Shown here piece after piece: positions 26,991 to 33,787 of a stretch of DNA of 64,000 nt. The stretch's first letter is position 1; each line of letters starts with the position of its first letter. The notes beneath the pieces are model-generated. The model was given only the letters and a program-made list of their open reading frames with translations, searched no databases and was not told the DNA's origin. Both the position numbers and the translations under genes were made by a program. The DNA is from Anolis carolinensis. Its lineage: Eukaryota. The stretch covers positions 25,559,923 to 25,623,922 of the forward strand of contig NC_085844.1 in the NCBI RefSeq assembly GCF_035594765.1. Reading direction: 5' to 3'.

Positions 26991-27325
26991 CTTCATATAT
27001 AAATATTGAACAACATGCGTGAAGATGAGAAAGAACTTGGGGCAGCCCACAGTTTAATGACCAGGGAGCTAAACAGGAGTCCTCTAATGCCACTCCATGG
27101 AACTGTCATCATTAATAGGATTAGAATAAATAATAATAAATAACGATTTAAATATAATGCACACCCTAGTCCCATCATACATGCTCCTAAATAATTTACT
27201 CAGAAGTTACTTCCTGGTATATCATTCTTATCAGCCATAGAAGCAACACATTCATTATATTTAACACAACATTTCATCATTGCAGAAAAATCAACTGAAA
27301 TTCATTTCAATTTCTGATTGACAAC

Positions 27326-28474
27326 TGTCAAGGACAGAACGCCACAAGATTCAAAGTAACAGAGTTTATTAGATTACAGAACTCAAAAATGCCCGTAAAA
27401 CACAAGGGCCAGGCAGTTTTTGCCTTTAGGAGCAAAAAGGGGCAAAAGTAAATGTTCAAAAGATAAACCGGATTAAACCGGAGTTTAATCCGGGTAAAAA
27501 CAAACTGCTTGCGTCAGCCTGGGTATAAACGAAACGAAAGCCAAGGAACAAAAGATACAAAGAATGCAACTAATTGGCAGCAGATTCCTCTCTGCTGCCA
27601 ACACTGTGCTTAGAGTAACTTGCGTCGCTCCCCCACACACACAGCAGACAGGATCTCCAACACGAGTAAAACAGCCAAGGATTGTAGCAGTTGAGTAGAC
27701 CAGTTCCGTTCCGTAGATCAAAGCCAGAAGCAGACGTTTGTAGTTTTTCCAAGTCCAAGAAGGGGGGAAGACAAGCCGTGGTCAGTTCAGTCCGAGTTCT
27801 CAAAGCAGGAGATGGCGTCCGTCAAGAAGACGACGGAGGGTCAAGCTAATAAGAGTAAGCACAGGTTTGCACAAACAAATGCCCACACAATCCCTCCCGC
27901 CGTCTGACCCTGGATTCCAATCAACTTACGTCACAGCACAGGAAAGCACACAAGTCTTCAGGGAAGCGTCCCACACACACACGGATCCCAAGCGTTTGCC
28001 CAGATTACCTTGCCCAACGCAATTTGCAATTGCTCCCAAGCCCCATTTTATGCCAGTTACAAATCTTCATCACTGTCAGCTGTCCTCCTTAACCCGGGCG
28101 TTTCCTCATCACTTTCCTCGTCAGAGCTGGAACACCTCTGACTACGCCCAACAGCATCTCCAGCTGTGGATCCCGTCCCATCCCTCCAGCTAAACCATGG
28201 GTCTAATCCTGAAGGTCCCCATTCATCTTCTGTCCCATCATGGCCAGTGGCACCCACTTCCTCCCTTACCCGAGTCCAATCCATCTCATCCTCCTCTGAG
28301 CTAACCAGCCCCTCCTCCATTCTCTCCGTAAACCCTTCGAAAGACTCCTCGTCAGAAGGTGCTGCAAATATGTCTCGCAGTCTTTTTCTCTCTCGCTCCT
28401 CGAGAGTATCTGACTCTCGAGGAGTCTTACGCCCACGTCTGTCAGTAACAGAGCCATGAGGCTCAATCATAACA
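27326..28474 (-). repeat. 3' LTR
   Basis: Minus strand TGTTATG...TGACA; AATAAA at 27365-27370; CATAAAA TATA-like box at 28046-28052; U3 fully occupied by the pol reading frame. Confidence 0.97.
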
Positions 28475-31400
28475 CTATCCCCTCTCACAAAGGCCTCCTC
28501 CCCCGATGGCGGAGAAGTGGCAGTGATACCCTCCGCTATAGCACCACGACGACTAGAGGTATCAAGTTTCAACAGCGAACGATGAAAGACTGGATGGACC
28601 TTTAAACTAGACGGTAAACGCAAACGAAACGCAACAGAAGAAATCTTTTTAACGATAGGAAAGGGACCCAAATACCGAGGCGCAAACTTTCCCCCAGCCT
28701 GTTTAATATGTTTGGAAGATAACCACACCAAATCCCCTTCTTCCAACTCCTCCCCTGCCTGCCTGTGGCGGTCAGCCTGAGTCTTTTGCGTTGCCTTAGC
28801 TTCCAACAGTAAGCGACGGGCAACATCATGCAACGCAGCCATTTCCGAAGAGCGGTACACAGGGTCCGAAGAGACCACATTGGTCGACGGCGCCACACCT
28901 CCCCGTGGGTGAAAACCATAAGTTAGCTCAAATGGCGTATGCTGACTAGACGTGTGCACCGCATTGTTGTAAGCAAATTCCGCCACCGGTAACCACTTTA
29001 CCCAAGCCGTGGGTTGATCTAAACAAAAACAACGCAGATACTGCTCTAAGAGCCCATTAACCCGTTCCGACTGTCCATCCGTTTGCGGATGGAAAGCTGA
29101 AGACACGTTTAACTTAGTCCCCAAACACTCATGGAAGTGTTTCCAAAAGCGTGACACAAATTGCGGAGCCCTATCTGAAATAATCACCTCGGGTGCTCCG
29201 TGCAAACGATAGATGTGCTTTGTAAATAGTAAGGCCAACGTAGGGGCCGCCGGAATGGTTGAACAAGGAATAAAATGAGCCAGTTTACTAAATAAATCCA
29301 CCACCACCCAAATACAAGTATAACCCCCAGACTTAGGCAAATCTGAAATAAAATCCATGGAAATGATTTGCCATGGCCTCTCCGGAACAGGTAAAGACGA
29401 TAACAACCCTCTAGGGCGCCCAACAGGCGTCTTACTCTGCTGACAAACGGCGCAGCTGTCACAAAAGCGCAGAATGTCTTGCCGCATCTTTGGCCACCAG
29501 TAGCTCCTGGTGATAAGCTGTACGGTCTTGAACCTGCCAAAGTGCCCAGCCATGGGTTCGTCATGGTGGGCTCTAATCACCTCCAACCTGAGGGCCCCCA
29601 CTGGTACGTAGACCTGCCCCCTTCGTACCAATACCCCGTCTTGATCCTGGAGATGCGGCAGTATGGTACGGTTACCTGCAGAGAGCAGCATCAGTTGCTC
29701 CTGAGTCCACACATCATCCTTCTGAGCCTCAAGGATCTGGTCATGTAACCCAAGCTCATTATCTACAACACACAGAGAGGCAGTAGGCAAGATGGTCTGA
29801 CATACTACCTGCTCATTGGTCTTAAATTCCGGCTTGCGGGATAAAGCATCGGCCCGCAAGTTTGCCTTCCCCTCCACGAACTGCACCTTGAAGTTAAACC
29901 TGGAGAAAAACAAAGCCCAGCGGATTTGACGCTGGTTTAACTTCTTTGCTGTTTGTAAGTGCTCTAAGTTCTTGTGATCAGATCTGACCACGATCTGATG
30001 CCGTGCCCCTTCAAGCCAGTGCCGCCACACCTCAAACGCCACCTTAATCGCCAACAACTCCTTCTCCCATATGGTATAGTTCTGCTCGAAGGGTGTTAGT
30101 TGCCGCGAGTAAAATCCACAGGGACGCAAGGTCCCTGAGGAATCCTTCTGAGACAATACAGCCCCCAACGCGTAGCTAGAAGCGTCCGCTTCTACCACGA
30201 ACGGTCTGTCAACATCAGGATGGGTTAGTATGTTGTCCGATTGAAAACTAGACTTTAGTTGTAGAAACGCCTCGTGAGCTTCCCGCCCCCACACAAATGG
30301 CTGTTTCTTGCGCAGAAGCTGCGTCAAAGGTACCGTGAGCTTTGCAAAATTCGGAATAAACTCCCGGTAGTAATTAGCGAAACCCAAGAACCTTTGTACA
30401 TCCTTCTTAGTCTTCAGCTCCTGCCATGAGTTGACGGCGTCAACCTTATGTGGGTCCATTTTAAGTTCCCTACCTGACACTACATGACCTAGGAACTCCA
30501 CTTCAGGCACATGAAAGACGCACTTGGAAGCCTTGGCGAAAAGCCCATTAGCCCGCAGTCGGTGCAGAACCTGCTTGACATGTTGACGATGTTCTTTCTC
30601 GTCCTTAGAAAAAATCAAGATATCATCCAAATAAATCACTAAAAATTGGTCAATTAGGTCCCTGAACACATCGTTCATGAACCTCTGGAATACCGCAGGA
30701 GCATTACAAAGCCCAAAAGGCATGACTCGGAACTCGTGGCATCCGAAACACGTGTTAAATGCCGTCTTCCATTCATCCCCTTCCCGTATACGAATTAAGT
30801 TATAGGCCCCCCGCAGGTCAAGCTTGGTAAAGACCTTAGCCCCTTGCACCCTTGATAACAGTTCCGAGATTAAAGGGAGCGGGTACCTATCCCGAATGGT
30901 GTATTTGTTTAGGATCCGATAGTCACAGACCAGCCTAAGTTCCCCAGTCTTTTTGGCTACAAAGAATACTGGTGCCGCAGTTGGAGAACTAGATGGGCGA
31001 ATAAACCCCTTGGCTAAATTTTCATCTAGAAACTCCCGCAAAGCTTGCCTTTCCGGTACAGTCAAGGCATACAGCCTCCCTGCTGGCAGTTTCGCACCTT
31101 CTGCCAACTTGATGGCGCAATCATATGGCCTGTGCGGTGGTAATTTGTCCGCTTCTCTTTTACAAAATACATCAGAGAACTCCCCATACTCAGCAGGCAC
31201 TCCCTCCATATCAGAATGAGTAACATTTAGAGTGCAACAATCCTGCCTCTTTAAGATCACTTTACGTGTTGCCCAATCTACTTGTGGGTTTACTACAGCT
31301 AGCCAATCCATCCCCAGGATCACATCATATCTAGGCAAGCTCGTAATATCCCACACAAACGTTCCCGTTACTCCCTGCACCTCCCACGTTACTGCTGAGG

Positions 31401-31680
31401 TTTCATGGTTAACCACCCCAGTCTCCAGCAGTCTCCCATCTGCTCCTTCCACCCACACGTCGCATGCCTTGCGCACTCTAGGAATGCCATGCTTCTTAGC
31501 AAACTCAATATCTACATAGGAGACCGTAGCTCCTGAGTCCAGCAGTGCCAAAGTAGAAACAAGTTCCCTTCCCCCAACAGATAATGTAATGGGTACGAAA
31601 ACATGCTTCCTCCCCTCAGTTGACTGCTTGAGGAGCCCTAGTGCGTTGGACTCACGTCGCACTAGGGCTGGCCTTTTCCC
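28057..31680 (-). CDS. pol: Pol polyprotein (protease, RT, RNase H, integrase, LTR-encoded acidic tail), probably expressed by -1 frameshift from gag
   Basis: Uninterrupted 1201-aa ORF (28057-31662): LLDSGA protease, YLDD RT (30622-30633), EADAS RNase H, H..H..C..C zinc finger, D-D-E (SMDF/SDR/SERVN), GPF motif; no chromodomain; frame open upstream to the slippery site at 31674-31680. Confidence 0.95.
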   Translation of the reverse strand, partial: GKRPALVRRESNALGLLKQSTEGRKHVFVPITLSVGGRELVSTLALLDSGATVSYVDIEFAKKHGIPRVRKACDVWVEGADGRLLETGVVNHETSAVTWEVQGVTGTFVWDITSLPRYDVILGMDWLAVVNPQVDWATRKVILKRQDCCTLNVTHSDMEGVPAEYGEFSDVFCKREADKLPPHRPYDCAIKLAEGAKLPAGRLYALTVPERQALREFLDENLAKGFIRPSSSPTAAPVFFVAKKTGELRLVCDYRILNKYTIRDRYPLPLISELLSRVQGAKVFTKLDLRGAYNLIRIREGDEWKTAFNTCFGCHEFRVMPFGLCNAPAVFQRFMNDVFRDLIDQFLVIYLDDILIFSKDEKEHRQHVKQVLHRLRANGLFAKASKCVFHVPEVEFLGHVVSGRELKMDPHKVDAVNSWQELKTKKDVQRFLGFANYYREFIPNFAKLTVPLTQLLRKKQPFVWGREAHEAFLQLKSSFQSDNILTHPDVDRPFVVEADASSYALGAVLSQKDSSGTLRPCGFYSRQLTPFEQNYTIWEKELLAIKVAFEVWRHWLEGARHQIVVRSDHKNLEHLQTAKKLNQRQIRWALFFSRFNFKVQFVEGKANLRADALSRKPEFKTNEQVVCQTILPTASLCVVDNELGLHDQILEAQKDDVWTQEQLMLLSAGNRTILPHLQDQDGVLVRRGQVYVPVGALRLEVIRAHHDEPMAGHFGRFKTVQLITRSYWWPKMRQDILRFCDSCAVCQQSKTPVGRPRGLLSSLPVPERPWQIISMDFISDLPKSGGYTCIWVVVDLFSKLAHFIPCSTIPAAPTLALLFTKHIYRLHGAPEVIISDRAPQFVSRFWKHFHECLGTKLNVSSAFHPQTDGQSERVNGLLEQYLRCFCLDQPTAWVKWLPVAEFAYNNAVHTSSQHTPFELTYGFHPRGGVAPSTNVVSSDPVYRSSEMAALHDVARRLLLEAKATQKTQADRHRQAGEELEEGDLVWLSSKHIKQAGGKFAPRYLGPFPIVKKISSVAFRLRLPSSLKVHPVFHRSLLKLDTSSRRGAIAEGITATSPPSGEEAFVRGDSVMIEPHGSVTDRRGRKTPRESDTLEERERKRLRDIFAAPSDEESFEGFTERMEEGLVSSEEDEMDWTRVREEVGATGHDGTEDEWGPSGLDPWFSWRDGTGSTAGDAVGRSQRCSSSDEESDEETPGLRRTADSDEDL
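28475..28488 (-). promoter_or_regulatory. Polypurine tract
   Basis: Minus strand GTGAGAGGGGATAG abutting the 3' LTR. Confidence 0.85.
31635..31680 (-). promoter_or_regulatory. -1 programmed ribosomal frameshift signal
   Basis: G GGA AAA heptamer in gag frame (31674-31680), 5-nt spacer, perfect 11-bp stem GCCCTAGTGCG/CGCACTAGGGC; pol is in the -1 frame. Confidence 0.85.
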
Positions 31681-32361
31681 GAAAGCTGGGAAGGTTTCAC
31701 ATTACAATTTTTGGCAAAATGCCCAGCATTCCCACAGTACAAACACAAGCCCAGCTGCCTCCTACGGCTCTTTTCCTCTGTAGACAGCTTTTTAAAGACC
31801 CCAAGCTCCATGGGCTCTTCCCCCATCACCACAGGTGCCCTGGTTACATGCATGGGTGGCGCACACATTGCTTTTGAGTGTTTACGAGCCTCGAACCTTG
31901 CGTCTAAACGCAGCACCTTAGCTACTAAGGCGTCCCAGCTTTCAGCCGGCTCCAAGCGTGCTAATTCATCCTGGAGCATATCACTTAACCCGGCAGTAAA
32001 TAAAAGCATGAATGCATTTTCCCCCCAATCCAGCTGGTGGCGATACAGGTTAAACTTATTTAAGTAATCCAAAACAGTCCCCTTTCCCTGTTTCAACCGA
32101 TACAGAGCCCACCCAGCGTTCTCCGTGCGGAGAGGATCCCCAAAAGTATCAGTTAACAACTTTTTGAAATTATTCAAATTGTCCTTGACTGGGTCATTTC
32201 CCAAAATTAAATTAGTGGCCCATTGTCCTGCGGGACCGGTCAACAAACTCAAAATAAAGGCCACCTTGCTAGTGTCTGTAGGAAAAGCATGAGCACTGAG
32301 CTGTTTGGCTAACGGTAAAAGCCGTTTGCAATTGGTCTACTTTGGCCCGTAACTCATCCAT
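31662..32361 (-). pseudogene. gag: Gag (capsid-like region plus CCHC knuckle), disrupted near the N-terminus
   Basis: ATG at 32361 gives MDELRAKVDQLQTAFTVSQTA and stops at 32269; a different frame from ~32300 gives QLSAHAFPTDTSKVAFILSLLTGPAGQWA...LKQG...EPMELG...CLYCGNAGHFAKNC. Confidence 0.88.
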
Positions 32362-32403
32362 CGTCTTCCTGACGGGTTTATTGCTGCAATAAACCTTTTA
32401 TGG

Positions 32404-32414
32404 GCGTTGGGCAA
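32404..32414 (-). promoter_or_regulatory. Self-priming primer-binding site (Tf1 type)
   Basis: TTGCCCAACGC begins 2 nt after the 5' LTR, lacks the TGG of tRNA-primed sites and is exactly complementary to GCGTTGGGCAA at 33111-33101. Confidence 0.85.
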
Positions 32415-32416
32415 TC

Positions 32417-33565
32417 TGTCAAGGACAGAACGCCACAAGATTCAAAGTAACAGAGTTTATTAGATTACAGAACTCAAAAATGCCCGTAAAACACAAGGGC
32501 CAGGCAGTTTTTGCCTTTAGGAGCAAAAAGGGGCAAAAGTAAATGTTCAAAAGATAAACCGGATTAAACCGGAGTTTAATCCGGGTAAAAACAAACTGCT
32601 TGCGTCAGCCTGGGTATAAACGAAACGAAAGCCAAGGAACAAAAGATACAAAGAATGCAACTAATTGGCAGCAGATTCCTCTCTGCTGCCAACACTGTGC
32701 TTAGAGTAACTTGCGTCGCTCCCCCACACACACAGCAGACAGGATCTCCAACACGAGTAAAACAGCCAAGGATTGTAGCAGTTGAGTAGACCAGTTCCGT
32801 TCCGTAGATCAAAGCCAGAAGCAGACGTTTGTAGTTTTTCCAAGTCCAAGAAGGGGGGAAGACAAGCCGTGGTCAGTTCAGTCCGAGTTCTCAAAGCAGG
32901 AGATGGCGTCCGTCAAGAAGACGACGGAGGGTCAAGCTAATAAGAGTAAGCACAGGTTTGCACAAACAAATGCCCACACAATCCCTCCCGCCGTCTGACC
33001 CTGGATTCCAATCAACTTACGTCACAGCACAGGAAAGCACACAAGTCTTCAGGGAAGCGTCCCACACACACACGGATCCCAAGCGTTTGCCCAGATTACC
33101 TTGCCCAACGCAATTTGCAATTGCTCCCAAGCCCCATTTTATGCCAGTTACAAATCTTCATCACTGTCAGCTGTCCTCCTTAACCCGGGCGTTTCCTCAT
33201 CACTTTCCTCGTCAGAGCTGGAACACCTCTGACTACGCCCAACAGCATCTCCAGCTGTGGATCCCGTCCCATCCCTCCAGCTAAACCATGGGTCTAATCC
33301 TGAAGGTCCCCATTCATCTTCTGTCCCATCATGGCCAGTGGCACCCACTTCCTCCCTTACCCGAGTCCAATCCATCTCATCCTCCTCTGAGCTAACCAGC
33401 CCCTCCTCCATTCTCTCCGTAAACCCTTCGAAAGACTCCTCGTCAGAAGGTGCTGCAAATATGTCTCGCAGTCTTTTTCTCTCTCGCTCCTCGAGAGTAT
33501 CTGACTCTCGAGGAGTCTTACGCCCACGTCTGTCAGTAACAGAGCCATGAGGCTCAATCATAACA
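32417..33565 (-). repeat. 5' LTR
   Basis: Copy of 27326-28474; CATAAAA at 33143-33137; predicted transcription start ~33111; ATG-initiated 137-aa ORF at 33561-33148. Confidence 0.97.
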
Positions 33566-33787
33566 ACAACCAAACAGAAAGATGTGAGTCTTCGCTGAAA
33601 GATTTATGAATCTTTGCACCACAAAGGAGTTTGGATTACAACACTGCTTACTTTATAAAATGAAATTTTACCATTATGGGCAAAAGTTCATGCCTGTAAT
33701 TATTTCAATGCACTTCTCAGTTGATGTGTCTTAGGCAGCTGAGCCAAACCCTATTTTACATATGCAGGTCATTTCATAAGAACTGCA

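What the first reader, a model, noticed from the sequence alone, without database searches (positions are those of the whole stretch)
28057..28474. Integrase tail encoded in the LTR carries a LEDGF/TND-binding-like motif (RLRDIFAAPSDEESFEGF) in place of a chromodomain
Seen: after the integrase GPF motif and VHPVFHRSLLK there is no chromodomain. The pol frame continues through the PPT and ~139 codons into U3 of the 3' LTR, giving a low-complexity acidic tail with a basic stretch (RRGRK...RERKR), then LRDIFAAPSDEESFEGF (28330-28380), then several CK2-type sites (SDEE, SSEEDE, SSSDEESDEE, SDED). Established: host partners of the LEDGF/p75 integrase-binding domain and related TFIIS-N-terminal domains (JPO2/CDCA7L, POGZ, MLL1, IWS1) bind through a helix + acidic linker + FxGF motif strengthened by CK2 phosphorylation; HIV-1 integrase uses the same LEDGF domain to reach transcribed chromatin; sushi-type chromoviruses usually end in a chromodomain. 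From memory, JPO2 motifs read roughly VADIFNAPSDDEEFVGF and LRRIF..DSETEDFAGF (needs verification). Inference: this lizard retrotransposon replaced its own chromatin reader with a mimic of a host short linear motif that tethers the integrase to LEDGF/HRP2 or another TND factor. I do not know of a description of this system.
Basis: partly seen in the sequence, partly recalled or inferred. Interest (0 to 1): 0.92.

Follow-up and report, generated by a model that had tools for sequence, protein, structure and literature searches.

The report
Integrase tail mimics LEDGF-binding motif
A very young Gypsy retrotransposon of the green anole has lost its chromodomain; its integrase ends in a disordered tail encoded inside its own LTR, and the most conserved part of that tail copies the short motif host proteins use to dock onto LEDGF/HRP2, the chromatin reader that HIV uses to choose integration sites.

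Summary
On the minus strand lies a complete Ty3/Gypsy element (27326-33565) with identical 1149-bp LTRs and a 5-bp target duplication. Its pol frame has no chromodomain and runs 138 codons into the 3' LTR.

The tail is a selected protein-coding sequence:
- dN/dS is 0.12-0.23 in frame and about 1-2.4 in the other two frames.
- There are no indels in 418 nt, against 19-182 gap columns in the rest of the LTR.
- The 27-codon motif stretch has dN/dS 0.03, as low as the RT and integrase cores.

The model is disordered except for one helix that ends in the hydrophobic anchor. A 7-residue acidic linker with a CK2-type serine follows, then FEGF. The best single-stretch PDB match is the LEDGF IBD-JPO2 motif 1 fusion (6EMO, 12 of 20 identical). 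A relative with 33% tail identity gives the same hit. A separate Podarcis chromovirus clade carries different FxGF tails.

First-stage notes flagged the same family on other DNA of this genome. I found no published description. I rate it a new variant of integrase-tail tethering.

The parts
27326..28474 (-). 3' LTR (1149 bp, TG..CA); its first 418 nt are coding
   Evidence: 100% identical to 32417-33565 at an offset of 5091
32417..33565 (-). 5' LTR; holds the same open frame (33148-33573), which is not joined to pol there
27321..27325 (.). target-site duplication ACAAC (the other copy is at 33566-33570)
31662..32264 (-). gag ORF (Ty3 capsid-like domain plus a CCHC knuckle); overlaps the start of pol in another frame
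28057..31662 (-). pol ORF, 1201 codons: PR, RT, RNase H, integrase, tail
28567..28737 (-). integrase C-terminal SH3-like domain (aa 976-1032), the last folded domain
   Evidence: Pfam PF24626, E 1.6e-16
28475..28566 (-). tail segment before the LTR (aa 1033-1063), including the polypurine tract at 28475-28486; no chromodomain fits here
   Evidence: dN/dS 0.37
28060..28474 (-). LTR-encoded integrase tail, 138 codons, acidic and predicted disordered
   Evidence: dN/dS 0.12-0.23 in frame only; no indels; pLDDT about 50
28414..28440 (-). basic patch (aa 1075-1083), a possible nuclear localisation signal
   Evidence: read directly from the sequence; the function is inferred
28363..28404 (-). predicted alpha-helix (aa 1087-1100) ending in the L..IF hydrophobic anchor
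   Evidence: the only helix in the AF2 model; aligns with the helix of JPO2 motif 1 in 6emo_A
28342..28362 (-). acidic linker APSDEES (aa 1101-1107) with a CK2-type serine
28330..28341 (-). FEGF (aa 1108-1111), the FxGF element
   Evidence: population variants at 28333 and 28336 are third-position synonymous changes
28261..28281 (-). second conserved block DWTRVxE, function unknown
   Evidence: invariant down to relative P0034
28177..28200 (-). third conserved block WxSWRD, function unknown

Best explanation
The element is a recently active member of a squamate chromovirus clade (Ty3/Gypsy) in Anolis carolinensis, and it has lost its chromodomain. Its integrase continues past the SH3-like domain into a 169-residue disordered acidic tail, and the last 138 codons of that tail are supplied by the first 418 nt of the 3' LTR. 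Within the tail, one short helix with an L..IF anchor, a 7-residue acidic and phosphorylatable linker, and FEGF together form a TND-interacting motif of the FxGF subclass (an IBD-binding motif). Its layout is nearly the same as motif 1 of host JPO2/CDCA7L. I infer that this motif docks the integrase onto the integrase-binding domain of the H3K36me2/3 readers LEDGF/p75 and/or HRP2. That would tether integration to transcribed chromatin and take over the tethering role of the lost chromodomain, with CK2 phosphorylation of the linker possibly raising affinity. Shown here: the anatomy, the coding constraint, the motif match, the disorder-plus-helix prediction, and conservation and recurrence. Inferred: the binding partner and the effect on target choice.
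For: - Structure of the element.
- Host and family.
- PDB match: the 38-residue stretch window:28285-28398:- gives 6emo_A (LEDGF IBD fused to JPO2 M1) as the best single-stretch hit, 12 of 20 identical and covering helix, linker and FxGF. The matching stretch of the 33%-identical relative P0034 gives 6emo_A as its only hit.
- Published definitions: helix, acidic linker and FxGF, with FxGF essential for LEDGF/HRP2 partners and CK2 strengthening binding (PMC9987994); consensus (S/E)xFxGF (PMC7337902).
- Structure prediction: the AF2 model has a single helix, at the expected place.
- Selection: tail dN/dS is 0.12-0.23 in frame and about 1 or more in the other frames. The motif stretch is at 0.03 with dS about 1, against 0.15-0.17 for the rest of the LTR tail and 0.37 for the segment before the LTR.
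- Codon changes: 11 synonymous and 5 conservative changes in the motif, against 20 and 37 elsewhere in the tail, Fisher p 0.02.
- Indels: none in the coding part of the LTR.
- Conservation: FxGF is kept in all intact tails.
- Phylogeny: the family is nested among chromodomain-bearing squamate elements.
- Recurrence: a separate Podarcis clade has other FxGF tails, and the motif is the longest invariant block of those tails.
- Precedent: integrase C-terminal tails tether MLV to BET proteins and Ty5 to Sir4 (PMC4176367).
Against: - There are no binding data and no complex model. No lizard PSIP1/HDGFL2 sequence could be obtained with the session tools.
- Short linear motifs give many false positives, and the PDB E-values are weak by themselves (0.11 and 0.95).
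- The linker is at the short end of the 8-16 residues stated for TIMs, though it is as short in JPO2 M1.
- The other conserved blocks of the tail show that the motif is not its only function.
- Of the four other copies whose neighbourhood I could see, only one lies inside an annotated gene range. The sample is too small to count either way.
- The Fisher test against the closer subfamily gives only p 0.086.
Confidence: 0.55

Rival explanations
1. The motif is a working TND-interacting motif, but its partner is another TND protein (TFIIS, Elongin A, MED26, PPP1R10, IWS1). Alternatively its role is not target choice, for example recruiting elongation factors or stimulating integrase.
For: TNDs share one binding mode, and several read helix-plus-acidic-linker motifs (PMC9987994). 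The tail holds further conserved blocks of unknown function.
Against: According to the same review, the FxGF part is a feature of LEDGF/HRP2 ligands, and many other TIMs lack it. The closest solved match is a LEDGF complex.
Confidence: 0.12
2. The tail is a selected disordered region with a different job, such as nuclear import through the basic patch, control of integrase solubility or multimerisation, or a nucleic-acid chaperone-like acidic tail. Its likeness to JPO2 would then be coincidental.
For: The whole tail is under purifying selection, not only the motif. The basic patch and the two Trp-rich blocks are conserved as well. The PDB E-values are weak.
Against: The motif stretch is about five times more constrained than the rest of the tail. 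Every replacement keeps a TIM feature: I to L, S to T, E to D, A to E. The chance of the consensus in this composition is 0.05-0.33%. FxGF tails recur in another clade.
Confidence: 0.2
3. The open frame in the LTR has no protein function. Its conservation reflects regulatory DNA in U3, or simply the youth of the copies.
For: The copies are young (LTR pairs 99.5-100% identical), and the 5' part of U3 could hold enhancers.
Against: Between subfamilies, synonymous change is abundant (dS 0.3-0.8) while dN/dS is 0.12-0.23, and only in this frame. There are no indels in 418 nt, against 19-182 gap columns in the remainder. The frame and the motif survive at 73% LTR DNA identity and at 33% protein identity.
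Confidence: 0.03
4. This is a rival about origin, and it is compatible with the best explanation: the motif was captured from a host CDCA7L/JPO2 transcript rather than evolving by convergence.
For: Identity with JPO2 motif 1 extends into linker residues (A-P-S-D) that the minimal consensus does not require.
Against: Only about 20 residues are alike and nothing beyond them aligns. The Podarcis motifs differ and resemble other host motifs, which favours repeated convergence.
Confidence: 0.15

Closest known systems
JPO2/CDCA7L motif 1 and the other host IBD-binding motifs or TIMs (POGZ, MLL1, IWS1, ASK, MED1, DPF3a)
   Same: Both have a helix with a hydrophobic anchor, a short acidic Ser-containing linker and FxGF, all within a disordered region. 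12 of 20 residues are identical to the JPO2 M1 part of PDB 6emo_A. The tail fits the (S/E)xFxGF consensus.
   Different: This motif sits at the end of a retrotransposon integrase and is encoded in an LTR. Binding has not been measured.
HIV-1 and other lentiviral integrases bound to LEDGF/p75
   Same: The proposed host partner and outcome are the same: integration tethered to H3K36me-marked transcribed chromatin (PMC9987994; PMC4176367).
   Different: Lentiviral integrase binds the IBD through its folded catalytic core dimer, not through a linear motif. Here the proposed contact imitates the host's own ligands.
Gammaretroviral (MLV) integrase C-terminal tail bound to the BET ET domain; Ty5 integrase hexapeptide bound to Sir4
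   Same: Both use a disordered C-terminal integrase tail carrying a short motif that tethers to a chromatin protein and is dispensable for catalysis (PMC4176367).
   Different: The motif class and the host partner differ, and this tail is far longer and lies in the LTR.
Chromoviruses (the chromodomain-bearing Ty3/Gypsy clade)
   Same: The pol tree places the family inside a squamate chromovirus clade. It shares the SH3-like GPF domain.
   Different: The chromodomain is absent. Only 31 residues separate the SH3-like domain from the LTR.

Membership tests
TND-interacting motif, FxGF subclass (IBD-binding motif) | FxGF preceded by S/E at position -2 | tested here: met
   E-S-F-E-G-F at aa 1106-1111; consensus taken from PMC7337902
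TND-interacting motif, FxGF subclass (IBD-binding motif) | an obligatory short alpha-helix with conserved F/V/L/I anchor residues upstream | tested here: met
   The AF2 model has one helix, aa 1087-1100, ending in L..IF. This is a prediction at pLDDT about 70, not a solved structure.
TND-interacting motif, FxGF subclass (IBD-binding motif) | acidic flexible linker (8-16 residues in the review) with phosphorylatable Ser/Thr | tested here: inconclusive
   The linker is 7-8 residues, depending on where the helix is taken to end. It is acidic, with a CK2-type S-x-x-E. The length equals that of JPO2 M1 but is at the lower limit.
TND-interacting motif, FxGF subclass (IBD-binding motif) | lies in an intrinsically disordered region | tested here: met
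   pLDDT is about 50 outside the helix, and there is no Pfam family
TND-interacting motif, FxGF subclass (IBD-binding motif) | Phe-dependent binding to the LEDGF/HRP2 IBD, strengthened by CK2 phosphorylation | not testable with these tools
   No lizard IBD sequence could be obtained, so complex prediction was not run
Chromovirus clade of Ty3/Gypsy | phylogenetic placement of pol among chromoviruses | tested here: met
   Squamate clade with SH-aLRT 100. The sister is Podarcis P0054, which has a Chromo domain. The family sits on a long branch.
Chromovirus clade of Ty3/Gypsy | a chromodomain at the integrase C-terminus | tested here: not met
   No PF00385 hit in pol or in the tail
Complete LTR retrotransposon | paired LTRs, target duplication, polypurine tract, gag and pol frames | tested here: met

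The most novel reading that the evidence does not exclude
Squamate chromoviruses carry a modular targeting cassette in the 5' part of U3. In this reading the integrase reads into the LTR and ends in exchangeable mimics of host chromatin-docking motifs. The candidates seen here are JPO2-like and DPF3a-like LEDGF/HRP2 ligands in some lineages and an HMGN-like RRSAR[IL] nucleosome-binding motif in others. Because the cassette is part of the LTR, it could be swapped between families by recombination, letting lineages change their genomic niche.
Probability: 0.3. Interest if true: 0.9.

Novelty: new variant of a known kind. Interest (0 to 1): 0.8.

Why it matters
LEDGF/p75 tethering is the textbook case of retroviral target choice, and it has been regarded as specific to lentiviruses. 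If this reading holds, a retrotransposon reaches the same reader by imitating the host's own ligands rather than through a folded integrase surface. That would be an independent evolutionary solution. It would also add a third class of integrase-tail tether, after BET/MLV and Sir4/Ty5, as the 2014 NAR review predicted. It would further suggest that a chromovirus can move from heterochromatin tethering (the usual role of chromovirus chromodomains; my background knowledge, not checked here) to gene bodies by swapping a domain for a motif. The hypothesis can be tested directly with peptides and with the many young anole insertions. It also shows that the 5' part of an LTR can be protein-coding, which repeat annotation usually ignores.

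Tried and rejected
- The PDB search with the whole 167-residue tail returned only a de novo designed protein. The short stretch was needed to find 6emo_A.
- PDB searches with the two Podarcis motifs gave no LEDGF complex: a chance citrate synthase hit, and nothing.
- The HMMER scan of 1.84 billion representatives with the tail found only anole sequences plus one spurious bacterial protein. I therefore have no evidence for the tail outside Anolis.
- A search with P0034 found no further relatives. Its genomic locus, and those of P0111 and P0083, are not on record, so I could not check whether those motifs are also LTR-encoded.
- Expression: all runs holding the sequence are contigs of uncertain kind, so neither transcription nor transcript ends could be shown.
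- Insertion preference: four further copies give one intronic, two near a called gene or ORF and one nested in an older LTR with no other gene called in the 21-kb locus. The sample is far too small, and the window copy is not in the gene-call index.
- Complex prediction was not run. The tool takes eukaryotic partners only from session results, and no PSIP1/HDGFL2 sequence could be reached.
- Literature searches found no paper linking FxGF, IBM or TIM motifs with a transposon integrase.

Full report
**Anatomy**

The feature lies on the minus strand. A direct repeat at an offset of 5091 defines two 1149-bp LTRs, 27326-28474 and 32417-33565. They are identical at every base, begin TG and end CA, and are flanked by the 5-bp duplication ACAAC.

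Between the LTRs lies a gag frame (32264-31662) with a Ty3 capsid-like domain and a CCHC knuckle. In another frame lies a 1201-codon pol frame (31662-28057). Pfam finds protease, RT, RNase H, the integrase zinc domain, the rve core and the SH3-like Tf2-1 domain at aa 976-1032, but no chromodomain.

The frame then continues for 169 residues. The polypurine tract GAGAGGGGATAG (28475-28486) is itself translated, and the last 138 codons lie in the LTR. The only poly(A)-signal-like hexamers are at LTR positions 986 and 1105. The coding part (positions 1-418) is therefore very probably U3, but the transcription start was not mapped.

**Host and family**

The tail finds two 90%-identity clusters of Anolis carolinensis 'Gypsy retrotransposon integrase-like' proteins, with 46 and 75 members.

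I examined five genomic copies: the window copy and one in each of loci L001 to L004. Their LTR pairs are 99.5-100% identical. Three of the five keep the full 1214-codon pol frame, counted stop to stop. The subfamilies differ by 6-14% internally, so differences between them record the evolution of lineages that were recently active.

**Is the tail a real protein segment?**

- Pairwise Nei-Gojobori dN/dS of the 138 LTR codons is 0.12-0.23 in the pol frame. In the two other frames it is about 1-2.4.
- Across lineages down to 73% LTR DNA identity, the 418 coding bases have no indel. The remaining 730 bases have 19-182 gap columns.
- Region-by-region values against two other intact copies:

| Region | dN/dS |
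|---|---|
| RT, RNase H, integrase domains | 0.01-0.05 |
| SH3-like domain | 0.06-0.08 |
| Segment before the LTR | 0.37 |
| LTR tail overall | 0.15-0.17 |
| 27 codons holding the motif (aa 1085-1111) | 0.03, with dS near 1 |

- Within those 27 codons, the window copy differs from subfamily L001 by 9 synonymous and 2 replacement codons.
- It differs from the most distant LTR by 11 synonymous and 5 replacement codons. The rest of the tail shows 20 and 37 (Fisher p 0.02; p 0.086 for the closer pair).
- The replacements are I to L, S to T, T to S, E to D and A to E. The anchor, the phospho-acceptors and the charge are all preserved.
- In public read-derived contigs, the two common variants inside the FEGF codons (28336 and 28333) are third-position synonymous changes.

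**What the motif is**

The stretch RLRDIFAAPSDEESFEGF lies at 28330-28383. An AlphaFold2 model built on five tails is disordered (pLDDT about 50) except for one helix, aa 1087-1100, which ends in L..IF. The linker APSDEES follows, then FEGF.

This is the published architecture of a TND-interacting motif: a helix, an acidic linker that CK2 can phosphorylate, and an FxGF element. The review describes FxGF as essential for the ligands of LEDGF and HRP2 and optional elsewhere (PMC9987994). The sequence also fits the IBD-binding consensus (S/E)xFxGF (PMC7337902).

A phmmer search of all PDB chains with 38 residues around the motif gave 6emo_A as its best single-stretch match. That chain is the LEDGF IBD fused to JPO2 motif 1. 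The E-value of 0.11 is weak on its own.

Three further points add weight:
- The target was predicted in advance.
- The matching stretch of the divergent relative P0034 returns the same chain as its only hit.
- Shuffles of the tail yield the consensus in 0.33% of trials and the stricter form in 0.05%.

**Conservation beyond the family**

Every cluster member with an intact tail keeps FxGF. One copy has FKGF. The helix anchor varies only between I and L.

A solo or 5' LTR at 69% tail identity (P0032) keeps DLFAEPTDEDSFEGF.

P0034 is an anole protein at 33% identity that aligns across the polypurine-tract/LTR junction. It keeps the helix, linker and FLGF at 16 of 24 identical positions. It also carries a further FEGF upstream and a degenerate third copy.

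Two other blocks, DWTRVxE and WxSWRD, are equally conserved and unexplained.

**Relatives**

By integrase similarity, the nearest non-family proteins (46-52% identity) are lizard and frog chromoviruses, and most carry Pfam Chromo.

A quick maximum-likelihood tree of pol, with the tails cut off, gives a squamate clade with SH-aLRT 100. In it the window family is sister to a Podarcis element that has a chromodomain (support 96). Loss of the chromodomain is therefore the parsimonious reading, although the family sits on a long branch.

In a different part of that clade, two sister Podarcis groups carry FxGF tails downstream of a recognisable or degenerate chromodomain:
- One has MFETSEDEEDSFRGF.
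- The other has WLFTPTLSASTFQGF. This is the longest invariant block of its tail, and it resembles the DPF3a motif that binds HRP2.

Among 117 non-family pol proteins (158,310 residues), the consensus occurs only in that Podarcis lineage and once inside a plant integrase core. FxGF tails therefore arose at least twice, or were lost several times.

**Mechanism and its limits**

I propose that the tail docks the integrase onto LEDGF/p75 or HRP2. This would direct insertion to H3K36-methylated transcribed chromatin. It parallels the disordered C-terminal tails that tether MLV integrase to BET proteins and Ty5 integrase to Sir4 (PMC4176367).

The partner and the effect on target choice are inferred, not shown:
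- No lizard IBD sequence was reachable, so no complex was modelled.
- The run data could not show expression.
- The four further copies with visible neighbourhoods are too few to test targeting. One is intronic in an EBF-like gene, two lie near a called gene or ORF, and one is nested with no other gene called in the 21-kb locus.

**Novelty**

Six full-text searches found no paper that connects FxGF, IBM or TIM motifs with a transposon integrase. First-stage notes of this scan flagged the same family and other LTR-encoded tails elsewhere in this genome. Those notes are unchecked and are not independent evidence.

Noticed in passing
P0083:1118-1155, P0068, P0111:1050-1085 and kin (Podarcis muralis): A separate clade of wall-lizard chromoviruses carries FxGF-type motifs after the chromodomain. 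In one group the motif is the longest invariant block of the tail, and it resembles the HRP2-binding motif of DPF3a.
   Followed up: partly
P0064 and P0070 (Anolis, 366 and 94 cluster members), P0054 (Podarcis): In these chromodomain-bearing relatives the pol product shows the same GD[SG]VM stretch that in the window spans the polypurine tract and the LTR start. This suggests, without their DNA having been examined, that they also read into the LTR. Their tails end in RRSARI/RRSARL, which resembles the nucleosome-binding core of HMGN proteins.
   Followed up: partly
P0034 (XP_016852620.1, Anolis): A 210-residue model at 33% identity to the tail, with two clear FxGF motifs and one degenerate copy in series. 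Its locus could not be fetched.
   Followed up: partly
window 28177-28200 and 28261-28281 (-): Two Trp-containing blocks of the tail (WxSWRD and DWTRVxE) are conserved as far as P0034 and have no explanation.
   Followed up: no
window 33148-33573 (-): The 5' LTR holds the same open frame, 141 codons from a TTG. There it is not joined to pol and lies upstream of the presumed promoter. In one other copy (the L002 element) the 5' LTR version has lost the second Phe while the 3' LTR version keeps it.
   Followed up: partly
P0003, P0010, P0032 (Anolis gene models): Annotation chimeras were seen. An OGFRL1 'isoform X4' consists largely of this family's RT. One model starts in the 5' LTR frame and continues in pol. 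One joins a LINE-like fragment to an LTR frame.
   Followed up: no
L002:10524-17851: A full-length copy of the family is nested inside an older LTR of the same superfamily at 73% identity. The target LTR resumes after the insert.
   Followed up: partly
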